Below are positions 3,402 to 51,100 of a stretch of DNA of 64,000 nucleotides, one piece after another. The DNA lies in the NCBI GenBank assembly GCA_964019335.1, contig OZ025683.1, positions 434,001 to 498,000 of the forward strand. The letters are read 5' to 3'. A model generated the notes under the pieces. It was not told the DNA's origin and did not search any database. It saw only the letters and a program-made list of their open reading frames with translations. The translations under genes and the position numbers were made by a program. The DNA is from Diplonema japonicum. Taxonomy: Eukaryota; Protista; Euglenozoa: Diplonemea. Numbering within the stretch: the first letter of the stretch is position 1; each line of letters begins with the position of its first letter.

Positions 3402-3439
<38 letters not shown>

Positions 3440-3828: not shown

Positions 3829-3863
<35 letters not shown>

Positions 3864-7011: not shown

Positions 7012-7014
<3 letters not shown>
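5208..7014 (-). mobile_element. piggyBac-superfamily DNA transposon, internally deleted and non-autonomous (element 1)
   Basis: TTAA at 5204-5207 and 7015-7018. 13-bp TIRs CCATCTACCAACG / CGTTGATAGATGG (1 mismatch). Minus-strand transposase fragments: DYW..MSRDRF..IL, YNTTMGGTD, LANAW, and C-terminal CKHC..QCSAC.VQLC..PCFKDYH. Confidence 0.92.
5444..6766 (-). pseudogene. piggyBac transposase pseudogene of element 1
   Basis: Motifs are spread over several frames (6524-6766, 6093-6554, 5983-6237, 5454-5921, 5444-5647) with stops. The central core carrying the first two catalytic Asp motifs is missing. Confidence 0.88.
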
Positions 7015-7051
<37 letters not shown>

Positions 7052-27179: not shown

Positions 27180-30100
27180 ATGCTCAACGCAGCGTCTTTT
27201 CTGCTGATCTGCGTAGTCGGTGCATTGTACGAGGAGACTGGCGGTGGGCTGGGCGACGTGTTCGTAGAGGATGTCTGCCTGTTCGGGTGCGAGGGGAACG
27301 GGTGCCCTTGCGATGATGTGTGCAAACATGACGAAGGCGACGTGATGAGCGACGCGTGTCAAGGCTTACTGTTTGACTACTGCTGCATGCATCGCAGGAG
27401 GGACATTGCTTGTGTGATGTTTGGCAGATGGGACATCGAATGTCTCCCGTGGCCCGTTGAGGCCACGACGTACATGGGCACCAAAGGCGTCACCACTTCC
27501 GTTTTCGCAACAGGGATCATTGCCAGCACGCCTTCGGAGATGGAGTACCCCGATACAATGTCACTCGGCGAGTCCAACTGGGAGCTGTCCACCTCTACGT
27601 GTGGTGCTTTCCCATGGGCCCCTCAGTCCCTCAACGGTTGGGTGCCTCAGTTTCAGCCTTCTCAACAGAGAGAGAAAGAAGAAGCCTTTGGGACTTTGGC
27701 TCTTTCGCACGACGGCCCCACAATACTCCTCTCGATCGAGCCCTTGCTTGACATCACAGGCATCTCTGCCCATGAAGTCTCATCCATGGGTGACATCGAG
27801 TCCATCACGCTCCTCTCCACGCCAGTTGTGGCGAACATCTCTGAGACAAGCTTTTACAAACAGTATGAAGTTTACTCTTCACCGGGTCCACCTGAGGCTT
27901 ACGTCGAAACTGACGGCACCCCTGGCGTAGGCTATCACGGCAACGTTGACACAACCACCTCCGGCCTGCGCTGCTTGTCTTGGGGACACAAGTTGTTCAG
28001 GCACCCTTACATGCCTTATGAATGGTCTTCTGACAGCATCTACGCTGAGCGCATGATGGTAGGCGAGGTGATGGGTTCCTATCAAGGAGACGGCGTGGGT
28101 GAGCATAACTACTGTAGGAACCCGGACGGCGACCCCAAAGGTGCCTGGTGCTACGTTTGGGATGAAAGTGACACGGGGCTGGGTCTTCCGCCAGTGTTTC
28201 CTGGTTCACAGTGGGAATATGATCCAACACCGCTGAAGCAAGACGACATGGGTGGCGGTCCCGATCCTGGTACAGGGGGCCCTGGCGGTGGTTTTGACCC
28301 TGGTCCTGATACAGGGGGGCCTGGCGGTGGCTTTGACCCTGGTCCTGACACGGAGGGACCTGATGGTGGTTTCGATCCTGACCCTGATCCGGGTGGTTTT
28401 AACCCTGACCCTGACCCTGACCCTGACCCTGATCAGGGTGGTTTTAACCCTGGCCCTGACCCTGATCAGGGTGGTGACCCTGGACCCGATACGGGCCAAT
28501 TTGAACCTGGGCAGGGGGAGGAGGACACGCAAGACCCTACAGGTGGTCAAGACTTCGGCGGGACTGAGTTTTTTAGGAAGAGACAAAATGTTTTAAGCCG
28601 ACAAGCAAGGACCCTTGACTGCATGACCCCGCAAGTTGCGGAATGTTTAAAGGTGTATGCCGAGATGGGCTGCACGGGTGTACCATACTACCCGGATTTC
28701 GACTGCAGCGTGGCGTTGCAGTGCACGGCGGAAGTACAGAAGCATTGTGGCACGCAGCCTAAGGCATGCGAAGATGATGTCGAAGTCCTACGCGTGTTGA
28801 CAGGCGATCCGGGAATGACTTGCGAACAGTTAGTGTTAGACGCCGCAACCGGAGCGATAGCAATGGTGGAGGCAATTGCTTTAGTGTGCAACACGCACAG
28901 AGAGGGGTGCTGCAAGTACTGCCTAACTTATGGGTACGGAAACCCTGCTGTTGAAAAAAAGATCCTAAGCAATACCTTCCCTCCGTCGGCTGTGGGGAAG
29001 GTACTCGTGTGGGCCAAATTCAAGCACTACTGCACGATCCCCGACCCCCAGCCATGCTTGACAACAAGAGAGCAGCCTGTCACCGTAAGCGATGGCGGTG
29101 CGTTGCAAGTAGTCACAGCAGTCAGGATATCCATGAAGCCGTCAGCCAACACCTACAAAGGGGTCGACAGCATTGCCATTACAGGCACAGTTCCTTCAGG
29201 ATGCCACGATGACAACACGCTAGGGCACTGGCAAGAGCCGTTGTGCGTGACGTGCAAAGCCACCGCAACAGAGGTTTGGAAAGGACCCGAGTGTACAACC
29301 CTGCAGTGCAACGCAAAAAAGTGCGACTACGGCTTCTGCGATGCTGCAGATCAGTGCAAGTGTTACCGCGGCTACGCAGGACCTACCTGCGGGGTTCAAT
29401 GCCCGCTGAACGCGACAGCTTACTTTTACTATAATGCAAGCTTCCACAACTATGTGATTCCGAGGAATGAGAATACGATAGTGACCAGGCCCGACCAGCT
29501 GGGATACCTGAATGAGTGGACCATATGCAGCGGAAATGGTGTGTGCGACGACGGTGTGGATGGCGACGGCAGCTGCATGTGTGACCCAGGCTTTGCAGGG
29601 CCAAACTGCAGTGAACACTGTCCTGGGATGATGCACGGACGCTTCGGGATAGTAACGTGCTCTGGTCGAGGGAAGTGCTATGACGGAGCGCAGGGCAACG
29701 CGACTTGCGAGTGCTGGGGACTGTACTTCGGGGACGACTGCTCCAAAGTGCTGTGCGACGAGAAAGAGTGCCACAATGGTGTGTGTCTGGACCCTGTAAC
29801 GGAGGAGCCGTGTGCTCTTGGGGGAAAAGGGTGCTACTGTGCGTGCTACGGAAAGGAGTCCTATTCACTGACTGGTGTATACAAGACTGACCAGCCAGGC
29901 TTGCATGGGTACTGGGACGGGGGAAAGTGTGACAAGTGCCAAGAGAACTACGGCGGCGACGAGTGCAATGAACGCGACAGGCAGTCGAAGACGTACAAAG
30001 GCGAAGTGAAGAGCGGGTCGAAGGAAAAGTTCGGCCCTGTCTATTTTGAACCTTGTACAGAGTTGAACATCGAGTTCACACTGTTGTCGGGTGATGAAGC

Positions 30101-33100
30101 ACAAGGAGAAGTGACTGCACTTGGCGGGTGGGGCACTATCTGCTATATTGACCTCAACAAGGATAAGCCCATCGAAATCTGCACACCTGACGCCAGCACC
30201 ATCCAGCAGTTCCCCAACAGCATTATCGCCTCCGTTACAACAGGCAGCATTACAACCGTGAGTTTCTCAGTTGGCTTTACCTACGCAGCGAGGTGTTTGA
30301 CAGCCTGCGGCGATCACGGTCTCTGCTCTGACGAAGAGCAAAATTTCAACATGAAGTACCCCGAGGCCGAGTATTCAGCCCGAGATACACCACCAGATCC
30401 CCCAGAGACAACTCATTCGAAGCAGCAGTCCATCCTTAGACAGAGGCAAGCAGCTGTGCTGTCGTACCAGAAGCTCTCCATGTCGCGCATCTGGGATGTA
30501 CAGAAGCTCCGCACTGCACTTATTCTAGGTGCCCGCATACGGCAGAAACATCGCAAAAGAGAGGGGGCTGTTCTAAACGCTGTCGGATGCAACACTGCAG
30601 GCGCTTCCTGTCAGCCCCACATGACATTGGCTGGTGGAACATGCACTTGCAACAGTCCTTATATTTGCCCCAATGACGACGGTCCCTGTTTCGTTCCATG
30701 CGGCACGACGTGGTCTTCCCCTGGTCCGAGCTGCACATCGGACGCCAGTGTTGTGAGCACTGTTTGCACGTGTAACGCTGACTTCACATGTACCAATGGG
30801 GAGTGCGAAATGAACCCTGTTGGCTGCAACACTGCCGATGCGGGTGGTGGCTGTGAGGCACACATGACTGTTGTCGGGGGAACATGCACCTGTGATGCAC
30901 CGTATCTGTGCCCCACAAACAACGGTGATTGTGTGGTTGGTTGTGACCTTTCCTGGTCGAACCCAGGACCCGATTGTACACCATCTTCAGCAGCTGTGTC
31001 GGGTACATGTACTTGCAACAGTGGTTACACGTGCACTGCTGGTGCATGTGCAATTGCGGCCGTTGGTTGCAACACTGCCGATGCAGGGGGTGGCTGTGAG
31101 GCACACATGACTGTTGTTGGTGGAACGTGCACCTGTGATGCACCGTATCTGTGCCCCACAAACAACGGTGATTGTGTGGTTGGTTGTGATCTTTCCTGGT
31201 CGAGCCCAGGACCCGATTGTACACCATCTTCAGCAGTTGTGTCGGGTACATGTACTTGCAACAGTGGTTACACGTGCACTGCTGGTGCATGTGTTGTTAA
31301 TCCTCCAGCGGCTGTTGGCTGCAACACTGCTGATGCAGGTGGTGGTTGTGAGGCACACATGACTGTTGTTGGTGGAACGTGCACCTGTGATGCACCGTAT
31401 CTGTGCCCCACAAGCAATGCCCCTTGTGTGGTTGGCTGTGACCTTTCCTGGTCGAGCTCAGGACCCGATTGTACACCATCTTCAGCAGCTGTGTCAGGTA
31501 CATGTACTTGCAACAGTGGTTACACGTGCACTGCTGGTGCATGTGTTGTTAGTTCACCAGCGGCCGTTGGTTGCAACACTGCTGATGCAGGTGGTGGCTG
31601 TGAGGCACACATGACTGTTGTCAGTGGAACGTGCACCTGTGATGCACCGTATCTGTGCCCCACAAGCAATGCCCCTTGTGTGGTTGGCTGTGACCTTTCC
31701 TGGTCGAGCCCAGGACCCGATTGTACACCATCTTCAGCAGCTGTGTCGGGTACATGTACTTGCAACAGTGGTTACACGTGCACTGCTAGTGCATGTGTTG
31801 TTAATCCTCCAGCGGCCGTTGGCTGCAACACTGCCGATGCAGGGGGTGGTTGTGAGGCACACATGACTGTTGTTGGTGGAACGTGCACCTGTGATGCACC
31901 GTATCTGTGCCCCACAAACAACGGTGATTGTGTGGTTGGTTGTGATCTTTCCTGGTCGAACCCAGGACCCGATTGTACACCATCTTCAGCAGCTGTGTCG
32001 GGTACATGTACTTGCAACAGTGGTTACACGTGCACTGCTGGTGCATGTGCAATTGCGGCCGTTGGTTGCAACACTGCCGATGCAGGGGGTGGCTGTGAGG
32101 CACACATGACTGTTGTTGGTGGAACGTGCACCTGTGATGCACCGTATTTGTGCCCCACAAACGACGGTGATTGTGTGGTTGGTTGTGATCTTTCCTGGTC
32201 GAGCCCAGGACCCGATTGTACACCATCTTCAGCAGTTGTGTCGGGTACATGTACTTGCAACAGTGGTTACACGTGCACTGCTGGTGCGTGTGTGTCGACT
32301 CCTTCTCCTGTTGGCTGCAACACTGCCGATGCAGGTGGTGGCTGTGGGGCACACATGATTATTATGAGTGGGTCCTGTGTCTGTGAGAATGACTACATGT
32401 GCCTAGAGACCAACGGTGACTGCTTCGTAAGTTGCGGCAATCACTGGTCCCCATCGGGACCTAGCTGCGTGGGGAACTCGAGCACATCAAGTCAATCAAC
32501 TTGCGAGTGCAACTATGGCTATATTTGTGGCAATGACCAGTTATGCGAGGTCACGGAGCTAGTGCCATGCGGTACCACCTTGTCGAGTGGGCAAACATGT
32601 GAAGAAGGCACTTCCTTAGAAGGAGGTGTCTGCACGTGTGGCGAGTCAGGTCTCTGCATAAGCAGCGAGTGCAAGGTGAAGTGCATGCACGGTGAACAGG
32701 GTTCGTGCATCGACAATGCGTTGCGAATGCCAAACAACCTTTGCGAGTGCACACCGAGTTACGTGTGTGCAGAAGATGGCTACTGCGTTTCATATGTATC
32801 TTGCGATGCAAGCATCTCAGCAGACTACGAAAGGTGCCACAGTGATTTGGTGCAGGAGGGCAATACATGCCGGTGCGGCAGTGAAAGGTTTTGTGAAACT
32901 GGAGCATGCTACACGAAGTGCAATATGCTGAGTTCTGAGTTGAACTGTCACCGCGATCAACTAATGTATTACGGTCGATGCCGGTGTGTTGGAGGGACAG
33001 TGTGCTTTCCTGATGGCGGCTGTGAGAATGCTGCGAGGGTTTGCGGGCAGACCGTCACGGTAGAGTACGGGCAGTACTGTATCGGTGCAGAAGCCAATGC

Positions 33101-36100
33101 AGGGATGTGTGTGTGCGATGTGAACGAGGTCTGCAGCAACGGGGGCTGCAGAACAAGATGTGACGCTGTGTCTTCAGGCAGCCTGTGCGTTGACGGTGCT
33201 GACGCTGCTTCATGGCCCAGGTGCACATGCCGCCCAGGCAGGGAGTGCATCGGCGGAGCTTGTGTTACTGTATTGGGGTGCAACCGGTGGTTGACTCTCC
33301 CCAGTGAGCAATGTGGGTTGAACATGCACTTAACTCCGTTCGATTCGTGTAGATGCAATAACGGGTACATATGTAAGCAGAGCAGGTGCGAGCCGTTGCG
33401 GCACTGCAACGAGCCAGCACCTGCTCAAACGCTATGTGGAGCAGGTCTGGTGCTGCGCCAGGGCAAGTGCGTGTGCGGCGGAGGTTTGCAATGCAGCAAC
33501 AGTAAGTGTAGGTATGGGTGCGGCCAGTTTCGCATGTCCCTCGATACATCGTGCACAATGGGTGCTGGGCTAGTGCGTAACGCCACAGATATGATAGCGG
33601 GCAACACAACAGCACTCAACACAACACTCGACTCGGCACTCAACACAACACTCGATACTACCGTACTCGTGGATCCATACATTTGCGAGTGTTACGCAAA
33701 CCTAACATGCCATAAGGGTGCGTGTGTCTCAGAGGTTATCGACACGTGTGATACACGAATCGTTAGCCCCCTTCAAGAATGTGCAGCAGGCCTGGTTGCA
33801 GAAAATGTAACATGCAGGTGCCCAATGGGTGCTGTGTGCTTGGACCAAGTGTGCCGCGTATCATGTACCCAGCATAGTAGGTGGAAGACGTGGAACACAA
33901 GTGAGGAATGGAACATAACTGACACAATCACAATGGTAACAGATTCGCTGCCGTGCGTACCGCATGCAGGTGTAGAGGATGGTGACTGTCGCTGCGACGA
34001 AGGGTTTGTGTGTTCCGACACCCTCTGCGTGCCACTCAGAAAATGCGAAATTGAGCTGCCTCGGCGTGGTACCTTGGGGCCTCTACGCCCCATGGTGCTG
34101 ACCCCTGCACCGTGTGTGAGACACGCCACTGATGTCAATGGCACATGCCTGTGTGGCCTCGACCACCTTTGCCACAGCGGGGCATGCGTCATGCCGTGTA
34201 ACATGACAACAGACATCAATGAAACAAGGTGCACTCCGCACTCGACACGTGATGACAACGTATGTCAGTGTGATCTTGGCTACAACTGCGTGAGGGGTGT
34301 TTGCGACACAGAGTATGTGCATACATGCAGTGTCATGTACGACAATGCTACGCAAGTGTGCTCGCGAAGCCACGGACTGGTTGGCGATGGCTTTGATTGC
34401 TATTGTGCGGCGGGCACGTGCGTTGGCGGTACCTGCATAAGTGAGTGCAACACAAACAGGACAGCACCCTGCACCCAAAACAGTTTTGGGCCGACGTGTA
34501 CATGTAGGAGGCAATTCAGTTGTATTGCAGGCGTGTGTCTGCGGGACGTGCCTTGTGACACTGCCATCCCTACGAACATAACTCACGCATGTGTCCCGGA
34601 CACTTATGAGAGTGACGACGGGTTCTGCAAGTGCTCGAGCAACTACACTTTATGTCAAGACTCTGTCTGTCGTGTAGGATGTAATGCAGAGCTCCGCACA
34701 GGCAAAGATCAGCAATGTGTCGCGAACGCTAACAGCACAGCAGCCGCTCATTGCGTGTGCAGCAGTGGATACTCCTGCCAAGATATGTCATGCAAGGAGA
34801 TAGCTGTCTACTCATGTGATGTGCACATAGACGCAACTTACCAACGCTGTAGTAGCGGGCTGAACTTCTCTACAGCTTTCGCGGGGTCCTGCACCTGCGA
34901 CACTAACACCATCTGCGTCGACCACGTTTGTCAGAAGAAGTGTAACCAGGAAGCAAATGACTGCTCACAGGGCTACTCCTGCTCGGGTGACGGACTATGT
35001 GTGCCCTGGGCGGTCAGCTCATGCAATCAGGAGTACGACAATACCATTCAGATATGCGGAGGAGGCCTGACTGGGCGAGACGGTACGTGTGCATGCCAAG
35101 ACTCGCATCACGACGCAGTATGCCTCCACGGCACTTGCCACACGCCGTGTGACTGTGACGATTGCGGACTGCCACTTGCATTCCCGTGTGTTCCTAACTC
35201 CGTGGGCCCAACGTGCATGTGCACAGAGAAGCTCGTGTGTTTCCGAGGTTTCTGTGGCTATCAAGGAACCCAAGCCCCACCAACACTGGCGCCACCCACA
35301 CTGGCACCTCTCACGCTGGTCCCACCTACAATGGCACCTCCCACCCCTTCACCCCCTCCTTGCGACGACGATCCATATGGCTGGCTGGAAATACACATGA
35401 AGGTGCAGTGTTTGCAGCTTCTGCGATTGTTACCAGAGGCATCTTTTTGCACACGCGATCTGAACACTATTTTTGAAGAATTGCCTGTTGGTGCCTACAA
35501 CCTATCACGTGTGTGCATGTCAACATGTGATTGCTGCCACTGCACCCCACCACCCTACATAGATGAATGTGATACATATCTGAAAACCAACCATTCCTGC
35601 GGCCGGAACACTACCGTCGTAGACGGCTTCTGCAGGTGCACCGGTGACACTGCGTGCACTAACGGAAAGTGCCGCACTATGTGTGATGTCATGCGGACTG
35701 GTTCAGACCCGGAATGTGTTCCGAACACAGTGAATGATGAGGTGCAAGGTGTATGTTCATGTGTGCCGGGTGCAGGTTTCACATGCCAAAACGGGACTTG
35801 TAGTGGAGGTGTTGCTGGGTGTGGGCAGGCGGTGAATGAAAAGGGATGCACTGACGGCGCCTACGACGTGGCAGGTACATGCACGTGTTTGTGGAACATG
35901 GCATGTGAGGAAAACGTGTGCCGCACAAAGTGCTTGCACGAGTTGAACAACGCCACGATGCCAAAGTGCGTATCTGAAGCACTCGTGTCGCGCCCTTATG
36001 GCGGACACTGCGTGTGCAGCTACTTTACAACATGTACTTCAGCAGGTACATGCACATTAGTGCAGCCTCCGGCACCGGTGTCCTTTGTCTCAGGTCCAGG

Positions 36101-39100
36101 ATGTTACGGAGTGGCTGTGACTGCCGCTCTTAGCTGTGAAGACTGCAGTCACGTCTTCCTACCTTCAGAGAAAATGTGTCGGGCATGCGACGCTTCTGGG
36201 TCCCCACTGTCCGCCGACTCAGTGAGGTGGGTGTACGGCGACGCTGTGTGGTGTGGTGCAAAATGCAGTGCCTCGGAAATAATAACTGTAGGTGTGATGG
36301 ACGGCCCGTTTAGTTTGGGATATCCTGCGGAACACCACACCTTAGGATCGGAAGTTGGGACGGACAGGTGGTATCAGGAGTTTATGCCCACTGAGGATGG
36401 GTGCCTGTCGCGTGCAAGCACGCTTCTAAGTTTTGTTTGCCCCGATGGTTCCCCGTTACTTGATGGGAAATTTTGCACGGGGTGCACAAAAGTAGAAATG
36501 GCTCTCATTGTGCTTGAGGGAGGGTGCAATGGCCCTGTCCTTGTCGTAGGTCACTACCTTGGGGCCGGCACGGAGAGGCCCGATGGTCTTTCGTGGGTGG
36601 AGTTCAAGTTCCTTGAAAGGCCGTTCTTGAACCAGTCAGAGGTCTACTGCCTGATGCTGGAGACCTATAGCTCTTGCTCTCACGTGTCCTGGGCCGCTAC
36701 ACCCACACCCTACGGTGTGGGCGGAACGCGTGGGTACTTTGAGAACAATAGATGGGTGCCAAACGGTACACTCACACATGGCTTCGCTGTTGCGGTTAAA
36801 CCAGATGTGACGCCAGCTCCTGTAGATGCGGGTCGGTGCCACACCTTATATACCTGTGCTGATTTGCCACATACAGGGAAAGTGTCACACGGCTGGATGC
36901 CGTCTTTCAAGAGCTGTGTTCGTGCCGCCCAGAGGGTGGGTGCGCCTTACATGACGTACCATACAGGGATGCGAGAGTGCGCCTCGTACATGACATGTCT
37001 CCGGAGGCTCCCCAGTGTTGACGAAGCAACGTCTTTGAGTGTTCGTGGTGCAAGTGTGGTGTGCGAGGTACCGGAGGGCTGTCTTGTAGACGGTTCATGC
37101 AAAGCGAACGGCTTTGGAAAAGAGTGGACTACTCTCTGTGAAAGGAACGCTACACACTGCACACTCTGCAAGACAGGCAGCACCCCTGCCTGCTACGACT
37201 GCGAGGAAGGGTACACTTTGTCAGTCACCGATGAGACGTCCTGCACTGGTGTATGTGTGAGCAACATAACAGGCACTGCGCCACCCACATGCACACCCCC
37301 ATGCACCTGCCGAGGAGAGGTTGCCTACGGCTGGTGCGACGGACGTGCTGCAGGTGGCATGCACTGCAATGGTGCCACACTGGTCAACGGGGCTTGTGTG
37401 TGTCCTTCGAAACAGTGGTGTGATGACACGTATCTGACAGAAGGCCAGTGCATCGATGGGACAGTGGTTGCGGTGCCTACTGGATGGTGTAATCAGCTCC
37501 CCACTACTGCAGGAACCTGTAAAGACTCCGGGGCTACTGTAGAATGTACCGGTGCTGCATGTTTGTGCGTGTGTCCAGACAACGCGAATTGCGATCTAGA
37601 CACGGGTGTGTGCATGGGGCAGTTCATCCAATGCAACAGCTATGCAGGAAACTATGGGTTCTGTGCGTACCCTGCTTTCCCTGACCCTGCGTCAAAGATA
37701 TGCGCTTGTCCTAAAGGCTTCCGCTGTACGTCCGACGACAATGAGATGAAGTGCACCATGCGGAACGACTGCGGGGGGTGCGGGCAGCTACCTTGTGACG
37801 AATCGCAGATCGCCACCATGCGACACGCCGCAAGTCTGACACGGCAATACAAGATCGTATACAGAACCGTAAAAAGGCTACAGGCACCTGGCCCTAATGT
37901 AGACTCTCCTGGTCCCGGTCCTTATCCCTCTCCTCCTTACCCTGATGTTTCTAGTCCCGATCCTGGTCCCGGTCCTTATCCCTCTCCTCATACTGTTCCA
38001 AGCCCACCCTATGGTTCTAGTTCGCAGGCACCCAGTACCTACACGGACCAATCCACCTTTTCTCCTTTCACCATCAACATCACGCACCCGCAAGTGTACA
38101 TGACCTACCAAGAGAAGCATCACGTACCTACTACGAAATTCTGCTTTGGCCCGCATAAGATCATGCGTTGGGACTATGATGGTGATGGGCTGTGCAAGTG
38201 CAGAGGGGACTACAAGTGGGTGTGTTGCGATACGAGCTCTGGCTCTATAGATGGGACGTGTGAAGAAGATCTGTACAACAGCTGCATACAAAACACGCCC
38301 GATCCGAGGGCAGGCTGCGGTGAACCTCCTTCGGAATACGGGTGCAAAGAGCACATGGAAGCAATCTGGGAAGGCGCAATAGGAGAACGGCAGAGGAATT
38401 GCAGATGCATAGCTGGGTTCATGTGCAACGCTCTGTACAGAACGTGCGAGTCTGTCCCGCATGGTGTGGACCACAGGCCACTAGCCGAGTGCGACAAGCA
38501 GGAAGTCGGTGGTGGGTGCATGTTTAATGCATTCACAGACAGTAAAGGTGTATGCAGGTGCAAGTCTGACAGGTACAAAACTGACCAAGGTACTTGGGGC
38601 TGTCAGGCAACAGGCAGATGCAGACTGACGCCCACAGACACTTGCTCAGTGCAGACTAGGGATGCGAGCAACTACGGGAAGTGCCTGTGTGACGCGAGCC
38701 TCCAAAACGGTTTCTGGAACGGCACTGACTGTGGTGAATGCTTAAACCAGTGGTTCGGTCCTGGGTGCACCTTAACATGCAACCTCACAACATTGGCCAC
38801 CGTATTGCCCGAGGTGGGTAACCTACCAACCTATTTGTTTGGCACTTACATCCCAGAAAACGGCGGCTCATGCGAATGCCCTACTGAAGTGACCGGCGGG
38901 AGCTCCTTGGGCTTCACAGGAACCTTGTGCAACGAGTGCTTGGCTGAGAATGGCAAGTTTGGCGACAACTGCTCCGATGCCCGTTCGAGCACCACAATGA
39001 AATGGGAACGTCAGTTCCAACAGTTCGTTCCTGTCGTGCTAGGCCCCTACAAGGTCATGAGCTACTCGCAAGTTTACATCAGTGTCGAGCTGTTATCAGG

Positions 39101-42100: not shown

Positions 42101-45100
42101 CTACGTCGGGGTGGAGTGCTTGGCCAAAGCGCAAGTCTCGGAGAATAATTTAGCGCGTGTTGCGAAGCTGTCGGTCACAGGTGCTGACAGGTCTGTCAAG
42201 TACTATACGTCCTTAGCAGGTGCTGCTGTGACCTTCAGTACAGGACAGTGGGATCACCTCCTGGCGGGTGCTGGGTCCGACGTCTCTCTCTTCAGGAGGC
42301 CCCGGACTAGCGCAAAGCTTGCAGACTGGGAATACATTGGCACATGCAACTTGCTCAATATGTTTGGATACGGCAGTGAAATCATCGGAGCAGTGCTGCA
42401 CAAGGGAATGGTGTACGTAGGGCTGCAAGGAGCAGAAAAGTCAGCGCTGGTGCCCTTCGTAGCAACAGAGCCGTTGGACATCATCAAGGGAAGGCATCGT
42501 CAGGACCAGTGCTCCAACATCACAGCCAACAGTGTCGTGACCGACTTTGTAGGGGACAACTACGAGCAGCGTTTAGTAGCAATGGCGCTCGACGATAGAT
42601 ACGATAGCATCTACACTGTGGCGCTGAGGTGGAACACTTCAGATGCGCTAGTAGTGCCTCTACTTGTGCTATCGAGGATCATGTTGGACACTATTGACAC
42701 GGACGACTGGTCAAAGGGCGCCTCCCACCCGATGTCCGCGTCTCTGCCACTCCCCATGATGAACACGGTTTCAAGCATTGTCGTGAACTATCGCGACAGT
42801 GTTACTAACAAGCCGCTTGACAACCCTTTCTTGTTCGTGATGGGGACCTCGAGGTCGTCCAGGATCATGGTGCTGAAAGTCTTCATGCCAACAAGTGGCC
42901 TGCTCAGCATCGACGATGGGTCACTGAACGACCTCCGTCCTGTTTACAACTTCCAGCCTGGCTTCTGCAGCCAGGTGCCATGTGAGACGATCGCAGAAAG
43001 CCTCATCCTGCGCGGGTGGCTCTACCTCGCCGTGCAGACATGGAACAAGAACACCAACAGAAGAACAGCAGTGTTGGGGAGGATACGCCTGGACATGATC
43101 AAAGACAGGTCTGCATCTTCCTACGGCTATACCGAAGTGCCAGAAAGCTGGTCTGGTACTGAGATGGGCATTGGGTTCATGGTTCTTGATGCAAACACGA
43201 CCAACACACGAGAAGAAACTAAGCAGCCCGAGCCGTTTCCCAGCACTGGTAATGGGTATCAAGCATGCAAGGGTAAGAGGTGTGGTGACACATGCGTGGC
43301 GTGTGAACCTAGTAGCACTCTTTGTGTTGAGACGCAAGAGAAGAAATATTGCACGGCAAAGGGGAATTGTGTGCCGGACATGCCTTCTTCTTGCTTGACG
43401 AGCGCTCCTACTTACATCTACCTGGGGCTCAAAAACTCTACACCGAGCATTTTGTACAAGTACAAAGTTGATGAGCTGAAGAACACCTTCCACGAAGAGC
43501 CAACACAGCTCACGCTCAACTACGAGAACATTGCCACCCAGTACCAGGCAGCCGTCGCAGCGGTGGCCGACCCGGGCATGCGACTGCTCTACGTGGTCAC
43601 AAAGCTCAATCGGTTGCAAGTGTCTGTCGTGAACCTATACGATGTGCAGAAGCTGTCGCCTGTGTACGTGGATGGCACAGGGGGCACCCTGGTGACAGTC
43701 AAGGGATCGGGGTTCCCACTCAATCTCAACCAGTCAGACAAGTCATTGGCCGTATCATGCAAATGGGGTGATTTCGTGTATAAAGGAAGCCCCACAAGCC
43801 CCACAGCCACACTCATAGACAGTGAGACTGTCATTTGTAAGGCACCGAAGAAGTCACAGTTCGACGCCTGTGCAGACGTACCGCTTGAAGTGTCCATTGA
43901 GAACGAGGCAAGATTCAGCTCGAATGGGATCCTCGTGCGACACATCAATGCTGCGATCATTTTCTCCTTGGCACCCCTACGAGGCACCCTCAAGTCAACC
44001 GTCATCATCACTCTCTCAGGTACGGGGTTCCTGAACTCGCCATATCTTGCATGCCTTGTGAACAACGTAGTGACGAAGGCGACGTGGAAGTCGTCGATCT
44101 CCATGTGGTGCACGCACCCTATGACCGACACACCAGCCGTCACAACAGTCGAGGTCACGCTGGATGGACAGAAGTACTCGGAATCGAAAAAACCGTATTA
44201 CATAGTGGGTGCACCCACGCAGATGGCCTGGACAATAGGAAAGTCCAGCACGATGGGGAAAACAGAAGCATATACATTTCCGTCAAAAGCAGTAAACGAC
44301 TTGCTGCCACTGGATATCAAGATGCTGGACTCAGCGGGCAACGAGGTAGGTTCCCGAGACGATGCGGTGCGCGACTATAACATATCCATGTATCTGGAGG
44401 GACCACCCCCTTCGCGCACGCTTCCCTGTGTGTCCGGACCTTGTGGCACGTTGAACGGCCTGGTCAGTTCGCCTATTTTTGCAGGTGCTGCGCAATTCCA
44501 GGGTCTGTATTTAGACTACCCGGGGGCTGGCTCGTATAAGATCATCATTAATGTTATTCGGTCAGATGCTGACTGCAGACCTCTGAGCACGCAAGCCCCC
44601 ATTGCGTCATGCTTGGGGCTTGTGGCCTTCTCAGAAGGTGCGGTGCCAACTCCAATAGCTTCTGCGGAAATCACTTTCGAAATCACAGCGTTGGCCAGTA
44701 CGCTCAAGCTCGTGACATCCCCGCCAAGGTTCAGCACCAATAAAGCAAAGCTCTCCTTGCAACCTATTCTGGTGTTCACTGATGTCTCGGACAACATTGC
44801 CACCACGCACAGTGGGAGGCTCAACATTATCATCACCCCGAATGAGGGTGCGGTGAAGCTCTCGGGCACACAAGGCGACAGGAGCACGGTTGAGTACAAA
44901 GACGGCAGGGTTACTTACTTCAACCTGCGTATCCTAGAGGGCGTCGAGGGCCAGCAGTACGTGTTGCGGTTCGTGCCGGACACCGACCACATCAAGCCTG
45001 TTGCGAGCGATCCCATCTACATCGCGGTCTGCGCCTCTACTAACAACGCAATCAGCAGTATCCAACCTGACAACGGACAGCTGGGGAGGCAGCTTGTGAC

Positions 45101-48100
45101 TATCAAGGGATGGAACTACAGGGAGGAAAACTCCGCATACTTGCACTGCAAATACGGCGATGACTATAAGATACAGGCCACCTTTGTCGACACTTGCACG
45201 ATGCTGTGCCCCTTGCAGGCCAAGACGGGTCCTAGGAGTGCGCCCTTGAAGGTGACCCTCGACGAGTCCGGTGTGTGGTACGACTTCGGCTTCAACTACT
45301 CATACATCGATGTGGTGAGCGAGCTCACGTGGTCTGTCGACAAGGACATGCTGTCGTACCCTTCGTCGTCTATTGTTGTATTTAATGACATCTTAATCAC
45401 ACTGCGCGATGTCAGCGGGAACTGGTTGAGGAGCTGGGACACAGTATCTAGAACCGTTTATCTCAAGACTCGTGTTAACTTAGGCAGTGGTGCAGTGCAA
45501 GCTGTTGTGTCGAACGGCCAAGTACTTTTGAAGGGACTCAGATCGCAGCTCCCCAAAGAGGACAAGTACATCTTCCTCTTCACAACTGACGCCAACGCCC
45601 CCATGCCCGCCGACCTCTCCACTTCTGATAGAACCGCAGCAGAGGTGGTAACGATGACATTACCTGAAGTGGAGATAACGCAGAGCATCAGGGAGATCGA
45701 TGACAGGTACGAACTGCTGCCTACGTTCATACTGGAAGGGACAAGCCTTCTCTCTTTCGACACGTTGGTTCTTCCGGCAGACGCCACAGCACAGGCTACC
45801 TACATTAGACTGGCGAGTTCAATCACTTCAACCGAGATGCGGTTTGAAGACATGGTAGAATGTGCCATGCTATGCACGCAGCACCCGTTATGTGCGGGAT
45901 GGTACCTCTTCATAAGCACCCATCAATGTTACTTTGTGTCGTACGTCAGAAATGTGGTCGCAGATGCCAACGGGTTTGCAGGGAAACTGGAAACCGGACC
46001 AGAGTCGCCCGTTGATTTGCCGTTCTTCATGAACTCATGTGCACCGAGGAACTGTTCCGAACCAGATGCCTCTGGGCTGTACACATGCCACTACCAGATT
46101 CCAGATGTCAGTGTCCCGACACCTATGCCCACCCCCATCTCGTTTACTGCTACATTGACCGAGTCGGAGACACAGACCTACGTGAACTTGTCTTTTTGGG
46201 ATGCTGTCGACCTCATGAATGCCTCTGTTGCGTCCGTGACGCAGGCACCTTTCGGTGAACACAATGAGTCCTCAGCAGAGGCGAAGATTCTTGATGCTGC
46301 CGTTCCTGCCTATCTGAACAACATGCCCGTTGATGGATGCGTGCCAAGTTCTGCCCAGGACTGCCCCCTCATGAGTGCTGTGCCGAGTTCTGCTGTCGTC
46401 TTCTCTACGACCCTCATCATCACAGTCAGCGAAGGTCAGCCGCACCATATGACCTTCGTGTCTAATACGAAAGGCATGCCGCTCTACAGCACGGCTACTA
46501 CGAACAGGCGCACGCTTGACATCCAGCCCATAGTGCTTGTCGTTGACATCGCTGAGAACGAAGTGAACTCCTATATCGGTGCACCCACAGTGGCTGCTGT
46601 GGTGAAACCATACTGCGTAAGGTCTCCTTCGCAGACATTGGAGGAGTTCAGGTACCCTCTGAGGGCAGCGAACAAGAAGAAGGCCGGATGCTTGCAGTTT
46701 TTAACAGAAGAAGATCTGGAATACGGTGTTGCCATATATGGTAAAACATACGGCCCCTCGTGTCACGGGACGGCACCGTCTGGGAAGGAAGCAGAATTTC
46801 AACTGACTTGCGAGCGGCTCCGTGGGGCCAACGTGTGGGTGGAGAATGCAAGAGCGGTATTCACAGAGCTGCACTTCAGAGGGTGCGCCTCAGATATGAC
46901 AGGGCTGCCGTGTGCAACTGACGTGAGATACAGAATCCATTTCAAACTTGAAGGTGCCGGCACGACGGTGCCCGATTTGATCAGCGACAGCATTTACACT
47001 GCGAACTGCCCCAAATCCAACGCGCCTCTCTCGGCGATCATTCCTGCATGGGCTAAGCTTGTGGGTGGTGCCACTGTAACGCTAAAGGGGTGGGACTTCC
47101 AGCCGCAGAGGAAGCTCAGGGTCAACCTTGGTGGAGTGGCGCTGACGCCGGAATTTATAGATACGTGCACTGCGATTGTGACTGTCCCCGGTGCCACGGC
47201 CGCAAGGGAACATGAAACACTTGAGCGTGAAGCCAAACCTCTCGCATATAGGGAATCTAAAGTGCTGGCATCCTTCGATAACCCCTCTGCGGCTAGTCTC
47301 AAGGTGTATGACGAGGACAACCCCGACTTCGAGAGTGAGCCTTTAGCGTTCCAAATCAAGAGCTCACTCCCCGAGTCGGTAGGCCTTGCTGCGGCCAGTG
47401 AAAGGAATGAGTCTATCCCCAGCGACTCCATAGTTTGCGGAGAGGAGACTGGCACGAGCAGGGCTTCCAGCCTCCCTAGAATGTGCTTCAAAACAGGCAA
47501 AGAAGTGCGTGTTGGCGAACTTATGATCATCCTGAAAGACGGTGCGGGCGGTGACCTTTACGCAAAAGGCACCTATCTTGACGGCGAGAACTTCGGATTC
47601 TTCGAAGAAGTAACGAACCCGAGTGATCCAAACGGGGCCAATGTATGGGGCAGGGAGTTCCCCGGTTCGCTGGACCAGGCAAGGGACGTCTTCATCACTA
47701 TTGAAGTGGAGCCACCGACCAGCGGGGCAGTTGTCACCGTAGCACCCATTAACACTGCGAACAGCATTGTCAACATGACAGAGACGGGCGGCGAGGGGAC
47801 GACGACAGACGGCTTGCTCAGCATCACCGACGTGGTGCTGTTTTATCCCAAGTCCGGAGAATATATATTTAGGTTCCGCGCACACGGCACCAACGTGAGA
47901 GGCAACCCTCATAACAATGGTGGTGTTCGGCTGTTCGTCGGGAAGGGCAGTCCCACGCAGTTCGTTATCAGCAACGCCGATGAATTGGTCCTCGGGACGG
48001 ACGGTGTTGCCGCGATGCAACCGCCTGTAAAGCTGGAACTGCTGGATGTCGCCAACAACACACTCATCAACAGCGACCTGCCTGCATCAGATTCAGGACT

Positions 48101-51100
48101 CGAAGTCCTTGTCACGATCAAGGCTAAGACTGTGTTTAGGCACCCAGAGCCGTCGTGGTCAGGATGGGGCACCGAGACACCTGCTAAGGAGAACGAGACT
48201 ACTGTCTACTTTGATAACATACCGAGGAACATAAGATGGCAAACGAAGGTGGACATGGACAAGAAACTGTTCCCTTTGGGAGTGCCTTTATCGTCGCAGC
48301 CTCTGTACTTCTTCCAAGCATTGGAGATGGGCGGTGAAGCTTACCCATCGCCTGTATTAACAACGGTAACGGGGGTTTCGGGAGAGATCGAGACAGTGAG
48401 CTTGTGGCACCAAGGGCCGAGCCTATCCAAAGCGTCAGCGGCAGTAGCAATAGGTGTTGAGTTCAAGGACCAGAAGGTGCAGGGCCTGTGGCACGGTGTG
48501 GAGTACGAAGTGACGTACTCTTTCAGCTTGCCTGGATATAGGTATTTAGGGACCAAGAGCCACAACATGTATGCTTCGAAGTGTTCTGAGGGGCAGTTCG
48601 CTGTCAACTTCTCGTCCCTCTGCACGGACTGCCCTGCTGGTGCCACATGCGACAGCAAATGCCGATTGGTGGCGCTTCCACCAAGACGACGTTGTGTTTT
48701 ATGAGTGCAAACCATTCGCTTGTGAGGGTGGGTACTGGGCTGGTGACAGGTCATGCAGGCTCGGCTCGGAAGGGCCTCTGTGTGCAGTGTGCTCCGATGG
48801 ATACGGAAAGAGCGGTGACACATGCATGGAGTGCCCCAGTCAAGCGCTAAACATTTTCACTCTAACGTTGGCTGCACTCATACTGCTGGTATGCTTATAA
48901 CCTTACGACCTTCAACAATATAACAGTTCGTCATCTTTACAATGGTCGTCACGAACCTGTCAAGTGGTGCAAAGGGTAAATCTCTGCTGTCGATTGTCAT
49001 CAAGCTTTTGATGAACTATCTGCAGACAGCAGCACTCATGAAGGCTTTCTTGGTATGTGCTCACCTATTCCACGTACACAACGAACAGGTGAAAGTGAAA
49101 GGTTTGGTGAATGACATGCTCGACAAGCAGGAACAAGCATCTGGCCCTAGCACGCAGTTCATCAGCTTCTCGTGCGCAGTGAACCTGGACCAATATGGCC
49201 TGTTTGTGATGTGGATGGCGTTGCCTGCCGCAGTGTTCTTGCTCCCTGGCATCGTTGCCATTATCAGCTACATCAGGCGGGCCCTCGTGAAAGAGAGGTT
49301 GATGTCCCAGTTGCTGGTCACAAGGGACAGGCGGTACTCTATCGGTTTCGAAGCAGAGAACGAGGAGCAACGCATCGCCGTTCTGCATGCTGTGCACACA
49401 GGGCTGCCGATCCCCAATTTTGAAGACGCCGAGCGGAAGGCAAGCAGAGAGGTGTCCGAGACGTGCAGCAACGAACTCGTCGCTGATTTGGAAACAGCTA
49501 ACCAAATCACGGGCGAAGGCTTGGGCTTCAGAGCTGCCCTGAACGAAGCCACGAAAGAAGAAGCACAAGGGCAGAAAGATAATGAAGCGCGTAAGAACTT
49601 GAAGCAGAAGGCAAAAGAGCTGAAAAGAGCAGCGCGACTGGCAGAAGAGGACCTCGAACACATCTTCAAGCTGTTGGAGTCCGAGAATCCTCTGGACAAG
49701 GAGGAAGCAGCAAGGCTAGTGGAGTCTGCCGCTACCGCAGAAGCAGAAATGAATGCCCAACAACTTGACAAAGACATCCGGAAGGTAGAAGACTCGGCTG
49801 CGGATGGCCCGATGCAAGCACCCCCTGAGCTGCAATGGGATCAGAAGATCAGCAAAACCTACAACAAGGCATACTGGAAACACAGAGTGACGGGGGAATC
49901 CTGCTGGCAGAAGCCTTTGGAGGTTGTGAACTACGAAGCAGAAGCAGCAAAGGCGGAGAGCGCGTCTATCAACAATCAGGAAAGCAGCGAGAAGTTCTCA
50001 TTGCTAATTGACGACTCTGGTGTAAGGAACATCGCAGCACGGCGACGATGGGCTCATGTGAGACAGGTCGTGATGGAGGGGATAAGGTCCAAGCGAGAGG
50101 AAAAAAGGAAGAAGGAGTTGGTTGCGACGAAGTGGCAGGGGCTGGCTATGCCGCTCTCTGCCTCGGACGACTTAAAGATGTTCATGATCAAGTGCTCGGT
50201 GTGTGAAGCGGACTACGGGTCGCTCATGTGCAAAGACTGCGGAAGCGCCGCACGGGACGAGTTCCGGAGGAAAAAGCTTGACCGGAGAGAGCGGCTAAAG
50301 GCAGGCGACTTCGATGACATCAGAGAGATGCTGCCCGACAAGAAAACCTTCGTGGAACACAACAACGGCCACGCGTACTTCTACGTCTGCCAGTTCTGCG
50401 ACAAGGTCGTTCACGCGTCTGGTGGTCCCAACGCACGACATTTGAGGCTACGTGTGCGCACCGAAGAGGACAACGACGAGGGTCTTACTGACAAGGATAT
50501 CGATAAGATAAAGCGGAAGGAGAACACAGCACGCCCCGAGGTCGTCTACACAGTCACGGTGCTCGTTGTGGTATTCCTCGCCTACCCCAGGCTCATGACC
50601 GAGATCGCTACATTAATGAAGTGCATCGACCTCCCTACCACAGGGAAGTCCTTCCTGGAGTCCGACCTACGTATTGAATGTTCGGATAAGAAGTACGACA
50701 CATGGAAGTCTGTGGCTGTTATTTTCTTCTTCGTCTACGGCTTCGGGATCCCCATCTTTGGCTTCTTAATGCTCAGCGCATGGGCAGGCAAAGACGGATC
50801 AGGGCTACTGCGCAAGAAGGTGGTTGAGTCCTTTGGGTTTTTGTACTCTGGGTTCCGTATGAACAGGTACTACTGGGAGATGGTCATCATGTTCCGCAAA
50901 ATGCTTGTCGTCTTCATCTTGGTGTTCTACGACGGGAAGGAGCAGTACCAGTCCATGCTCGGCACGTGGCTTATGACTTTCTTCCTGCTTGTCAACATCT
51001 TCGCAAAGCCGTTCATGTTCCATGTGTTGTGGAGGATAGAGAACCTCTCTCTTGCTTGCATTGCCGTATCGTTGAACCTGGCCATGCTCTACGAAAAGAA

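What the first reader, a model, noticed from the sequence alone, without database searches (positions are those of the whole stretch)
27180..48650. Giant receptor ectodomain apparently built by nested domain-within-domain insertion
Seen in sequence: several modules are split by large in-frame inserts. (1) An EGF-like unit starts CGDHGLC at 30306-30326. Its expected second half, GKCLC..NGFWNGTDCGEC, appears only at 38676, after ~2,780 aa of Cys repeats; an intact unit of the same pattern is at ~39440-39570. (2) The kringle (27924-28154) lacks its last Cys pair until HYCTIP..C at ~29025, and itself sits inside a beta-sandwich-like domain (GISAHEV..[insert]..VTAVRISM..GVDSIAITG). (3) The C-type lectin runs from CGTGW (39747) to YICEK (40961), ~400 aa versus the usual ~130, inside a repeated beta-sandwich unit. 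(4) A Cys module at ~43260-43400 interrupts a propeller-like blade. (5) A PAN-like module at ~45850-45950 interrupts an Ig-like repeat. The 21.5 kb is one uninterrupted reading frame with no evident introns. Inference: the gene grows by insertion into loops rather than by exon shuffling, giving a branched, multi-arm sensor.
Basis: partly seen in the sequence, partly recalled or inferred. Interest (0 to 1): 0.82.

Follow-up and report, generated by a model that had tools for sequence, protein, structure and literature searches.

The report
Giant protist receptor with nested domains
A marine protist (very probably Diplonema japonicum) has a 21.5-kb intron-free stretch encoding the outer part of a roughly 8,000-residue membrane receptor in which several domains really are lodged inside loops of other domains; domain nesting is known (laminin, integrins), but this scale, depth and family are undescribed.

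Summary
The reading frame is real: 27180-48704, 7,174 codons, no stops and no intron-like sites. The contig is eukaryotic and not human, very probably Diplonema japonicum. Four of the five claimed "split" modules hold up.

1. The EGF-like module is an 8-cysteine laminin-type unit cut between Cys3 and Cys4 by 2,783 aa. A relative from Papus has the two halves contiguous.
2. The kringle's last Cys pair lies 283 aa downstream. Papus relatives have a complete kringle.
3. A predicted structure (pLDDT 68) shows three levels: a jelly-roll holding a complete C-type lectin fold, which holds a 264-aa insert.
4. The Cys module is a lineage-specific insert inside a conserved domain. A propeller fold is not shown.
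5. The PAN-like module sits between two Ig-like repeats and is not nested.

The gene does not end at 48704. After a frame shift near 48654-48666 it continues through a Cys stalk, a transmembrane helix, two tiny introns (38 and 36 nt) and a TRP-like multi-pass domain, ending at 51647.

The family occurs in diplonemids and a prokinetoplastid, with at least 14 giant genes sharing the stalk in this genome. Earlier notes of this scan described other giant surface proteins on other DNA of this genome.

The function and the "branched sensor" shape are inference.

The parts
27180..51647 (+). Whole gene as read here: ectodomain ORF, frame-shifted Cys stalk with first TM helix, two tiny introns, multi-pass membrane domain
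   Evidence: Papus transcripts P0009 and P0034 carry TIG, TRP and WW in one protein. The pieces were searched apart and never joined.
27180..27236 (+). Signal peptide-like N-terminus (aa 1-19)
   Evidence: read from the translation; inference
27735..27845 (+). N-side flank of the domain that hosts the kringle (fold not determined)
   Evidence: conserved in the C14 paralogue, the D. papillatum orthologue and Papus
27924..28166 (+). Kringle, N-terminal five-sixths (aa 249-329)
   Evidence: Pfam PF00051, E 5.5e-12, 46.3 bits (cut-off 34.3), profile positions 6-67 of 79
28167..29015 (+). 283-aa insert in the kringle Cys4-Cys5 loop: low-complexity Gly/Pro/Asp repeats plus a Cys-rich helical module
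   Evidence: absent from Papus (10-14 aa) and about 35 aa in the C14 paralogue; 39- and 45-bp tandem repeats at 28265-28465
29016..29057 (+). Displaced kringle C-terminus with the last Cys pair (KFKHYCTIPDPQPC)
   Evidence: aligns with KEYCTIPVAIGC of Papus P0009. In P0010 the Pfam Kringle match reaches profile position 77 of 79.
29097..29201 (+). C-side flank of the kringle's host domain, followed by a 4-Cys module (29202-29294)
   Evidence: conserved across the family
29991..30293 (+). Jelly-roll (PPC-like) unit 1, uninterrupted
   Evidence: family HMM; the equivalent unit of P0034 hits Pfam PPC at E 7.7e-4; hhalign to units 2 and 3
30294..30326 (+). LE-type EGF, first part (Cys1-Cys3: CLTACGDHGLC)
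   Evidence: conserved in the C14 paralogue, P0001, P0007 and P0008-10; contiguous with the second part in P0034
30327..38675 (+). 2,783-aa cargo inserted between Cys3 and Cys4: basic helical linker, about 50 six-Cys modules, Pro-rich linkers, and about 420 aa (aa 2919-3337) where the six-Cys pattern was not found
   Evidence: cargo differs or is absent in relatives
30819..32358 (+). Young tandem array inside the cargo: 252-bp unit, 6.2 copies, 92% matches
38676..38768 (+). LE-type EGF, second part (Cys4-Cys8)
   Evidence: invariant core in all relatives
39027..39437 (+). Jelly-roll unit 2, with a variable loop of 23-91 aa at the site that holds the CTLD in unit 3
39438..39569 (+). Intact 8-Cys LE-type EGF used as the reference pattern
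39585..39743 (+). Jelly-roll unit 3, N-terminal half (model residues 12-64)
   Evidence: AF2 pLDDT 79-88; Tk-SP C-terminal jelly roll aligns over model residues 12..545, 95 residues, Z 10.7, rmsd 2.3; Pfam PPC profile positions 2-34 of 70, E 0.11
39744..39986 (+). C-type lectin-like domain, N-terminal half
   Evidence: hhalign against a canonical CTLD profile: probability 99%, E 3e-18; many animal multi-CTLD proteins hit these positions
39987..40778 (+). 264-aa Cys-containing insert in the CTLD long-loop region (fold unknown)
   Evidence: 180-302 aa where both CTLD halves were recovered (10 relatives); skipped in all CTLD structure alignments
40779..40967 (+). C-type lectin-like domain, C-terminal half, ending ...YICEKPR
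   Evidence: complete CTLDs (CLEC5A 118 of 118 residues, Z 13.3; CLEC-2 120 of 120, Z 13.1) align over model residues 65..472; hhalign of the final strand gives P 0.0026
41037..41186 (+). Jelly-roll unit 3, C-terminal half
   Evidence: hhalign to unit 2 P 2e-4 and to unit 1 P 1.3e-3; found in five further paralogues
41217..42149 (+). 4-Cys module and EGF/LE array
   Evidence: Pfam EGF_laminin E 5.5e-7, DSL, EGF_2
42162..43664 (+).
   Evidence: conserved in all relatives; only weak internal repeats
43212..43409 (+). Insert of about 66 aa with an 8-Cys module, inside that domain
   Evidence: present in the orthologue clade only; the flanks abut in the C14 clade and in Papus
43665..48581 (+). IPT/TIG and further Ig-like repeats with variable linkers
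   Evidence: Pfam TIG E 2.3e-23 and several stretches
45849..45950 (+). PAN-like 4-Cys module in a linker between two Ig-like repeats (not nested)
   Evidence: Pfam PAN_1 E 0.027; alignment
48654..48666 (+). Frame-shift site: 13 nt where orthologues have 10 codons; the frame moves from 0 to +1
48667..48888 (+). Cys-rich stalk and first transmembrane helix (frame +1)
   Evidence: aligns with P0001 and P0002
48889..48926 (+). 38-nt GTATG...ACAG intron
   Evidence: fits the species' intron features (PMC12621601)
49053..49088 (+). 36-nt in-frame intron without a stop (reads VCAHLFHVHNEQ)
   Evidence: these 12 residues are absent from D. papillatum P0002
48927..51647 (+). Multi-pass membrane domain with a cytoplasmic WW-like motif
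   Evidence: Pfam TRP PF06011 E 1.8e-5 (below cut-off), WW E 0.0056; the same pair occurs in Papus

Best explanation
The stretch is the single large exon for the extracellular part of a polytopic membrane receptor of about 8,000 residues. It belongs to a family restricted, as far as found, to diplonemids and a prokinetoplastid. The layout is a signal peptide, a mosaic ectodomain, a Cys-rich stalk, and then a TRP/Flc-like multi-pass domain with a cytoplasmic WW-like motif.

The ectodomain has grown largely by in-frame insertion of modules into surface loops of existing domains:
(a) An 8-Cys laminin-type EGF is cut between Cys3 and Cys4 by a 2,783-aa chain of about 50 six-Cys modules. This is the same site at which laminin L4 domains are inserted.
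(b) A kringle sits between the two conserved flanks of a host domain, and itself carries a 283-aa insert in its Cys4-Cys5 loop.
(c) A jelly-roll holds a complete C-type lectin-like fold, whose long-loop region holds a 264-aa insert.
(d) An 8-Cys module is inserted in a conserved domain.

Shown here: the nesting at (c) in a predicted structure; the insertion status of (a), (b) and (d) by comparison with relatives; the continuity of the gene into a membrane domain.

Inferred: that the two EGF parts still fold together, stapled by the Cys2-Cys4 disulfide; and that the protein is an adhesion or recognition receptor coupled to a channel-like membrane domain.
For: - ORF and coordinates.
- Colinear orthologues at about 42% identity over more than 5,000 aa, and a paralogue.
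- Site (a): Papus P0034 has unit 1 (HMM match aa 101-216) directly followed by the second EGF part (profile match from aa 218), with only 9 residues between Cys3 and Cys4. P0008-10 have both parts about 1,000 aa apart with other cargo. In Papus P0009 and P0010 the Cys counts are odd on each side (2+3 and 5) and sum to a full LE module. Diplonemids have one extra Cys on each side. Laminin L4 is inserted between Cys3 and Cys4 of LE domains (PMC5338690).
- Site (b): the Pfam Kringle match covers profile positions 6-67 of 79 here and 4-77 of 79 in Papus P0010. The loop is 10-14 aa, then about 35 aa, then 283 aa.
- Site (c): AF2 with 15 sequences gave pLDDT 67.8 and pTM 0.65. Complete CTLDs align over model residues 65..472 at Z 12-13. 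A 95-residue jelly roll aligns over residues 12..545 at Z 10.7. Foldseek also finds CTLDs. hhalign gives E 3e-18 for the N half.
- Site (d).
- Inserts are kept in mRNA of relatives: Sulcionema and Papus transcript-derived proteins.
- Membrane domain.
Against: - No structure covers site (a). The diplonemid-specific extra Cys on each side would also fit two halves that have become self-sufficient.
- The P0034 unit-1 match is weak (9 bits).
- The host fold around the kringle and the fold of the domain at (d) are untested.
- The AF2 model rests on only 15 sequences, and the inserts are poorly modelled.
- The jelly-roll N half is not significant by hhalign (P 0.07-0.17).
- As assembled, the gene is frame-shifted before the membrane anchor.
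- The TRP and WW matches are below Pfam cut-offs.
- No expression data for this species were examined.
Confidence: 0.72

Rival explanations
1. Linear mosaic at site 1. The ancestral LE module was split long ago, and its two parts are now independent small disulfide knots capping the neighbouring modules. The 2,783-aa array is then a linear spacer and not a closed loop.
For: Diplonemids have one extra Cys on each side (the 'EPC' in unit 1, and a Cys 12-14 residues before Cys4). This gives even Cys counts (6 and 6), which allows self-contained pairing. A 4-Cys module of the same type stands alone after two other domains. An array of about 50 modules would have to return to its starting point.
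Against: In Papus P0009 and P0010 both sides have odd Cys counts (5 and 5) that together make one LE module. Both parts are conserved wherever both regions were recovered: this gene, the C14 paralogue, P0001, P0007 and P0008-10. They are contiguous in P0034. The cut is at the same Cys3-Cys4 site where laminin tolerates an inserted domain. The two extra Cys appear together in the same lineage, which also fits a second staple.
Confidence: 0.22
2. A decaying or mis-assembled gene. The frame shift means the locus is a young pseudogene (or yields only a secreted product), so the 'inserts' have no present function.
For: There are 13 nt where orthologues have 30 nt, which moves the frame and gives a stop at 48702-48704 before the stalk and membrane domain.
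Against: 7,174 codons upstream and the whole downstream part are open. The orthologues and the C14 paralogue recovered share the nested layout, with conserved Cys. The shift sits at an AAA run, so a one-base assembly error on top of a shorter loop is equally likely. Either way, the architecture claim rests on the family and not on this copy.
Confidence: 0.12
3. The inserts are introns or otherwise removed from the mRNA, so the mature protein has ordinary uninterrupted domains.
For: One real 36-nt intron of this gene (49053-49088) is in frame and free of stops, so open frame alone does not exclude introns.
Against: Only 8 GTATG sites occur in the 21.5 kb, and none has the A-rich tail; one checked at 47306 encodes a stretch also present in both orthologues. 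This species' introns have a median length of 41 nt, whereas the inserts are 0.2-8.3 kb. The inserts carry conserved Cys patterns and are present in transcript-derived proteins of Sulcionema and Papus.
Confidence: 0.03

Closest known systems
Laminin short arms: L4 domain inserted in a laminin-type EGF (LE) module
   Same: An 8-Cys LE-type module is interrupted between Cys3 and Cys4 by foreign sequence, while the array continues on both sides (PMC5338690). The module here has the same 8-Cys pattern, and Pfam EGF_laminin matches occur in this protein.
   Different: The cargo here is 2,783 aa and about 50 modules, against one globular domain in laminin (the related LF insert is about 220 aa). The cargo is lineage-variable, and absent in one Papus paralogue. 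No LN domain, coiled coil or other laminin-defining parts were found in the Pfam scans. This is not a laminin.
Integrin beta subunit (PSI holds hybrid, which holds the beta-I domain) and the integrin alpha-I domain in the propeller
   Same: Multi-level nesting of extracellular domains in a surface receptor (established knowledge, not tested here).
   Different: The domains are unrelated. Here the nest is jelly-roll, then CTLD, then a 264-aa insert, and there are at least four nests in one chain.
Polycystin-1 / PKD-REJ type receptor-channel proteins
   Same: A giant mosaic ectodomain with a C-type lectin-like domain and many Ig-like repeats, joined to a multi-pass TRP-like membrane domain. This is a resemblance from general knowledge.
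   Different: No GAIN/GPS, REJ, PLAT or PKD-repeat matches were seen in the Pfam scans. The membrane part matches PF06011 (the fungal Flc/Pkd2-like 'TRP' family) only below its cut-off. The comparison is an analogy, not membership.
C-type lectin-like domains (CLEC5A, CLEC-2, DC-SIGNR and others)
   Same: The complete fold is recovered in the model (Z 12-13, rmsd 2.3-3.0 A, 118-132 residues aligned). The N half matches by profile at E 3e-18.
   Different: The long-loop region, which carries the Ca2+/sugar site in true lectins, is replaced by a 264-aa insert. The usual WND-type motif was not seen. The whole domain lies inside another domain.
Other giant surface proteins of the same genome
   Same: Intron-free giant ORFs with EGF and lectin modules and a membrane anchor. 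At least 14 genes share the stalk and first TM helix.
   Different: Those notes describe linear vWA arrays. Nesting was not their subject, and I did not examine those loci.

Membership tests
Kringle (PF00051) | Profile match above the curated cut-off | tested here: met
   46.3 bits against a cut-off of 34.3, E 5.5e-12, profile positions 6-67 of 79. The paralogue covers 6-64 and Papus P0010 covers 4-77.
Kringle (PF00051) | Six Cys forming three disulfides within about 80 contiguous residues | tested here: not met
   No Cys corresponding to Cys1 precedes the domain, either here or in Papus. Cys5 and Cys6 lie 283 aa after Cys4. Disulfides themselves cannot be tested with these tools.
C-type lectin-like domain | CTLD fold | tested here: met
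   The AF2 model aligned to complete CTLDs at Z 13.3 (CLEC5A, 118 of 118 residues, rmsd 2.4) over model residues 65..472. Foldseek probability 1.0.
C-type lectin-like domain | Ca2+/carbohydrate-binding motifs in the long-loop region (EPN/QPD, WND) | tested here: not met
   The long-loop region is replaced by a 264-aa insert, and no WND-type motif precedes the penultimate Cys in the sequence read. It is therefore lectin-like in fold only.
Laminin-type EGF (LE) module with an inserted domain | Eight Cys in LE spacing, with the insert between Cys3 and Cys4 | tested here: met
   The intact reference module at aa 4087-4130 has 8 Cys. The split module has Cys1-3 at aa 1039-1049 and Cys4-8 at aa 3835-3863. 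The halves are contiguous in P0034. The laminin rule is taken from PMC5338690.
Laminin | LN domain, coiled-coil long arm, LG domains | tested here: not met
   None was reported by the Pfam scans of the whole protein.
PPC / beta-jelly-roll (PF04151-like) | Jelly-roll fold formed by one contiguous domain | tested here: inconclusive
   The fold match to the Tk-SP C-terminal domain is Z 10.7 with 95 residues, but it is formed by two segments 430 aa apart. The Pfam PPC matches are below cut-off: E 0.11 here for the N half only, and E 7.7e-4 for P0034 unit 1.
IPT/TIG (PF01833) | Profile match above the cut-off | tested here: met
   82.4 bits, E 2.3e-23, with three or more stretches.
PAN/Apple | Profile match above the cut-off | tested here: inconclusive
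   PAN_1 gave 14.8 bits against a cut-off of 21.4, E 0.027. Only the 4-Cys spacing fits.
TRP (PF06011, Flc/Pkd2-like membrane domain) | Profile match above the cut-off | tested here: inconclusive
   24.2 bits against a cut-off of 28.5, E 1.8e-5. The same region matches in Papus P0009 and P0034 at 20-22 bits. Channel activity cannot be tested with these tools.
Plexin/semaphorin-type (Sema-PSI-IPT) | Sema propeller followed by PSI and IPT domains | tested here: not met
   No Sema or PSI match was found. The domain before the TIG repeats has only weak internal repeats, and its fold was not predicted.

The most novel reading that the evidence does not exclude
The family uses a few fixed loops as docking sites where cargo of any size is swapped between lineages: the LE Cys3-Cys4 loop, one jelly-roll loop, and the kringle Cys4-Cys5 loop. 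In this gene a 2,783-aa, 50-module chain would form a closed loop stapled at its base by the Cys2-Cys4 disulfide plus a diplonemid-specific second Cys pair. This would be the largest known domain-in-domain insertion. It would also be a general way for intron-poor euglenozoan genomes to build branched giant receptors.
Probability: 0.35. Interest if true: 0.75.

Novelty: new variant of a known kind. Interest (0 to 1): 0.6.

Why it matters
Domain-in-domain insertion is known, but usually as one compact domain in one loop. This gene has at least four nests in one chain. One is three levels deep. Another places kilobases of repeats inside a 45-residue EGF-type module, at the same Cys3-Cys4 site that laminin uses.

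Relatives show the same loops empty or filled with other cargo. That gives a natural series for studying how extracellular proteins tolerate insertion and how giant genes grow without exon shuffling.

The family (giant ectodomain plus TRP-like membrane domain) is unannotated; the D. papillatum orthologue is filed as a nucleosidase. It belongs to diplonemids, among the most abundant marine heterotrophic protists, whose surface biology is essentially unknown. D. papillatum is genetically tractable, so the ideas can be tested.

Tried and rejected
- AF2 on aa 3790-4720 with a 4-sequence alignment gave pLDDT 30.6 and was unusable.
- A word search with a 591-aa piece found nothing because of the length window. 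The whole-length query then found two orthologues.
- Pfam on the separate halves gave only weak or no matches.
- hhalign of the jelly-roll N half to units 1 and 2 was not significant.
- A self-comparison of the 'propeller-like' domain gave only weak repeats.
- A scan for hidden GTATG-type introns inside the ORF found none credible.
- An intron cannot explain the frame shift, because only 13 nt separate the two conserved coding segments.
Joined or changed sequences may not be typed or handed to the fold tool, so I used the natural sequence and natural relatives instead.
I stopped that step and read the coordinates by numeric slices.
- The spliced or frame-shifted gene model was searched piece by piece. 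The joined product was never built.

Full report
**Setting.** The window holds a 7,190-codon open frame, 27132-48704 on the + strand. The first Met is at 27180 and is followed by a signal-peptide-like stretch. All large ORFs of the window lie on the + strand. The neighbours are eukaryotic: a kinesin, a WD40 protein, an inosine-uridine nucleoside hydrolase, a four-domain ion channel and a CAP protein. Earlier notes of this scan name the genome as Diplonema japonicum. This fits three results obtained here. The best database relative is a D. papillatum protein with the same upstream nucleoside hydrolase. The 3' introns begin with GTATG and have an A-rich tail. Their lengths of about 40 nt match those published for D. 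japonicum (PMC12621601). The contig is not human.

**The gene is longer than the finding.**
- The frame-0 ORF stops at 48702-48704, in the middle of a Cys-rich stalk.
- Frame +1 continues with '...WWRFHQDDVVFYEC...' and a transmembrane helix up to 48888.
- A 38-nt GTATG...ACAG intron (48889-48926) restores frame 0.
- A second, 36-nt intron (49053-49088) is in frame and has no stop. Its 12 codons are absent from the D. papillatum orthologue.
- The downstream ORF runs to 51647 and has several hydrophobic helices. It gives a below-cut-off match to the TRP/Flc family PF06011 and a WW-like motif.
- Paralogues and orthologues read straight from ectodomain to stalk in one frame.
- Papus transcripts carry TIG, TRP and WW in one protein.

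At 48654-48666 this gene has 13 nt where the orthologues have 10 codons. The frame change is therefore either a real lesion or a shorter loop plus a one-base assembly error at an AAA run; I cannot tell which. An intron cannot explain it, because the two conserved coding segments are only 13 nt apart. I searched the pieces apart and did not build the joined product.

**Relatives.**
- At least 14 loci in this genome share the stalk. Most sit in open frames of 2,000-12,749 aa.
- The closest paralogue (contig C14, 7,409-aa open frame) is colinear with this gene at 23-40% identity.
- A whole-length word search found two orthologues (P0001; P0002 from D. papillatum). Both are colinear at about 42% identity over more than 5,000 aa.
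- A profile search of the full representative library found further members. These come from Sulcionema specki and Papus ankaliazontas transcriptomes and from unnamed assemblies.
- The D. papillatum genome paper does not mention EGF, lectin or receptor families in its main text.

**Site 1, the split EGF.** The intact reference unit (aa 4087-4130) has eight Cys in laminin-type spacing. The first part (aa 1039-1049, C-x3-C-GDHG-x-C) supplies Cys1-3. The second part (aa 3835-3863) supplies Cys4-8. Between them lie 2,783 aa with 329 Cys and about 50 CxC-type modules. These include a 252-bp unit repeated 6.2 times at 92% identity.
- Both parts are conserved in the paralogue, in P0001 and P0007, and in Papus P0008-10. 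In P0008-10 they are about 1,000 aa apart and the cargo is of other domain types.
- In Papus P0034 the jelly-roll unit 1 (HMM match aa 101-216, weak at 9 bits but end to end) runs directly into the second part (profile match from aa 218). Only nine residues separate Cys3 and Cys4, and the same downstream modules follow.
- Cys counts support contact between the parts. In Papus P0009 and P0010, unit 1 plus the first part has 5 Cys and the second part has 5. Diplonemids add one Cys on each side. That fits a second staple, but it also fits the rival of two self-sufficient halves.
- The cut lies between Cys3 and Cys4, the site where laminin L4 domains are inserted in LE modules (PMC5338690).

**Site 2, the kringle.**
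- Pfam finds a kringle at aa 249-329, but only profile positions 6-67 of 79.
- In Papus P0010 the match covers positions 4-77 of 79, with 11 residues between Cys4 and Cys5.
- P0009 ends '...KEYCTIPVAIGC', which matches KFKHYCTIPDPQPC at aa 613-626 here.
- The Cys4-Cys5 loop is about 35 aa in the C14 paralogue and 283 aa here. Part of it is Gly/Pro/Asp low complexity with 39- and 45-bp tandem repeats.
- The kringle lies between two flanks that are conserved across the family, so it is probably itself an insert in a host domain. The host fold could not be tested.

**Site 3, the lectin nest.**
- By profile comparison, the N half matches a canonical CTLD profile built from animal multi-CTLD hits at E 3e-18. 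The final strand (YICEKP) aligns to the canonical C-terminus at P 0.0026.
- AF2 with 15 natural sequences gave pLDDT 67.8 and pTM 0.65. Confidence was 80-90 in the flanks and in both CTLD halves.
- Structure alignment places complete CTLDs over model residues 65..472: CLEC5A with 118 of 118 residues (Z 13.3, rmsd 2.4) and CLEC-2 with 120 of 120 (Z 13.1).
- The 95-residue C-terminal jelly roll of Tk-SP aligns over model residues 12..545 (Z 10.7, rmsd 2.3).
- The result is jelly-roll (aa 4136-4188 plus 4620-4669) holding a CTLD (aa 4189-4269 plus 4534-4596), which holds a 264-aa insert.
- All relatives in which both CTLD halves were recovered keep this layout, with inserts of 180-302 aa.
- In P0034 the same jelly-roll loop holds about 1,190 aa of different cargo.
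- Units 1 and 2 of this protein are the same kind of jelly-roll without or with only a short loop. This is supported for the C half and not significant for the N half.

**Site 4.** The 8-Cys module with its linker (aa 5345-5410) is present only in the orthologue clade. In the C14 clade and in Papus the flanking strands abut. It is therefore a true insertion inside a conserved domain. A propeller fold is not shown.

**Site 5.** The PAN-like module lies in a variable linker between the end of one Ig-like repeat and the start of the next. Papus has only a small 3-Cys motif there. It is not nested.

**Introns and splicing of the inserts.** Only eight GTATG sites occur in the ORF, and none resembles an intron. 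Transcript-derived relatives retain the inserts.

**Interpretation.** The nested architecture is real at four sites and conserved across the family. The functional reading is inference from the module types: an adhesion or recognition receptor coupled to a channel-like membrane domain, possibly with side arms. Nesting as such is known from laminin L4 in LE modules and from integrins, so I rate this a new variant of a known kind in an undescribed family.

**Limits.**
Coordinates come from numeric slices.

Noticed in passing
window 49053-49088: A real 36-nt intron that is in frame and free of stops, so ORF scanning reads straight through it. Its 12 codons are missing from the D. papillatum orthologue. 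Such hidden introns could inflate predicted proteins elsewhere in this genome.
   Followed up: partly
window 48654-48666: A frame shift between the ectodomain and the stalk: 13 nt where orthologues have 30 nt. It is either a very recent lesion or an assembly error at an AAA run.
   Followed up: partly
window 26052-27077 and P0002: The GenBank D. papillatum orthologue is named 'putative uridine nucleosidase 2, partial'. Its model fuses the upstream nucleoside hydrolase gene to the giant receptor. The same gene order is seen here, with about 100 bp between the two ORFs.
   Followed up: partly
window 30819-32358: A 252-bp (84-aa, two six-Cys modules) unit repeated 6.2 times at 92% identity. The repeat array is still expanding.
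   Followed up: no
window 28265-28465: 39- and 45-bp tandem repeats encoding Gly/Pro/Asp low complexity inside the kringle insert. They are absent from the D. papillatum orthologue.
   Followed up: no
G000 contigs C66, C4, C57, C14, C7, C1, C54: At least 14 loci share the Cys stalk and first TM helix. Open frames reach 12,749 and 11,951 aa. Five further paralogues carry only the C half of the jelly-roll next to the EGF array, so their N halves may lie far upstream.
   Followed up: no
P0034 (Papus ankaliazontas), aa 880-2215: The jelly-roll loop that holds the CTLD here holds about 1,190 aa of other modules in this relative (EGF-like units, six-Cys repeats, a long non-Cys region).
   Followed up: partly
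window aa 961 and aa 3821 of the protein (about 30060 and 38640): Two extra Cys, one in jelly-roll unit 1 and one 13 residues before Cys4 of the split EGF. They occur together in the diplonemid members checked and are both absent from Papus P0009, P0010 and P0034. This is a possible second disulfide across the insert.
   Followed up: partly
window 49830-50420: The large cytoplasmic loop of the membrane domain has a WW-like motif (E 0.0056) and a zinc-ribbon-like Cys cluster (E 0.034). A WW match is also found in Papus P0009.
   Followed up: no
window 2800-9000: A low-GC stretch (40-43%) with few ORFs, ahead of the unidirectional gene cluster.
   Followed up: no
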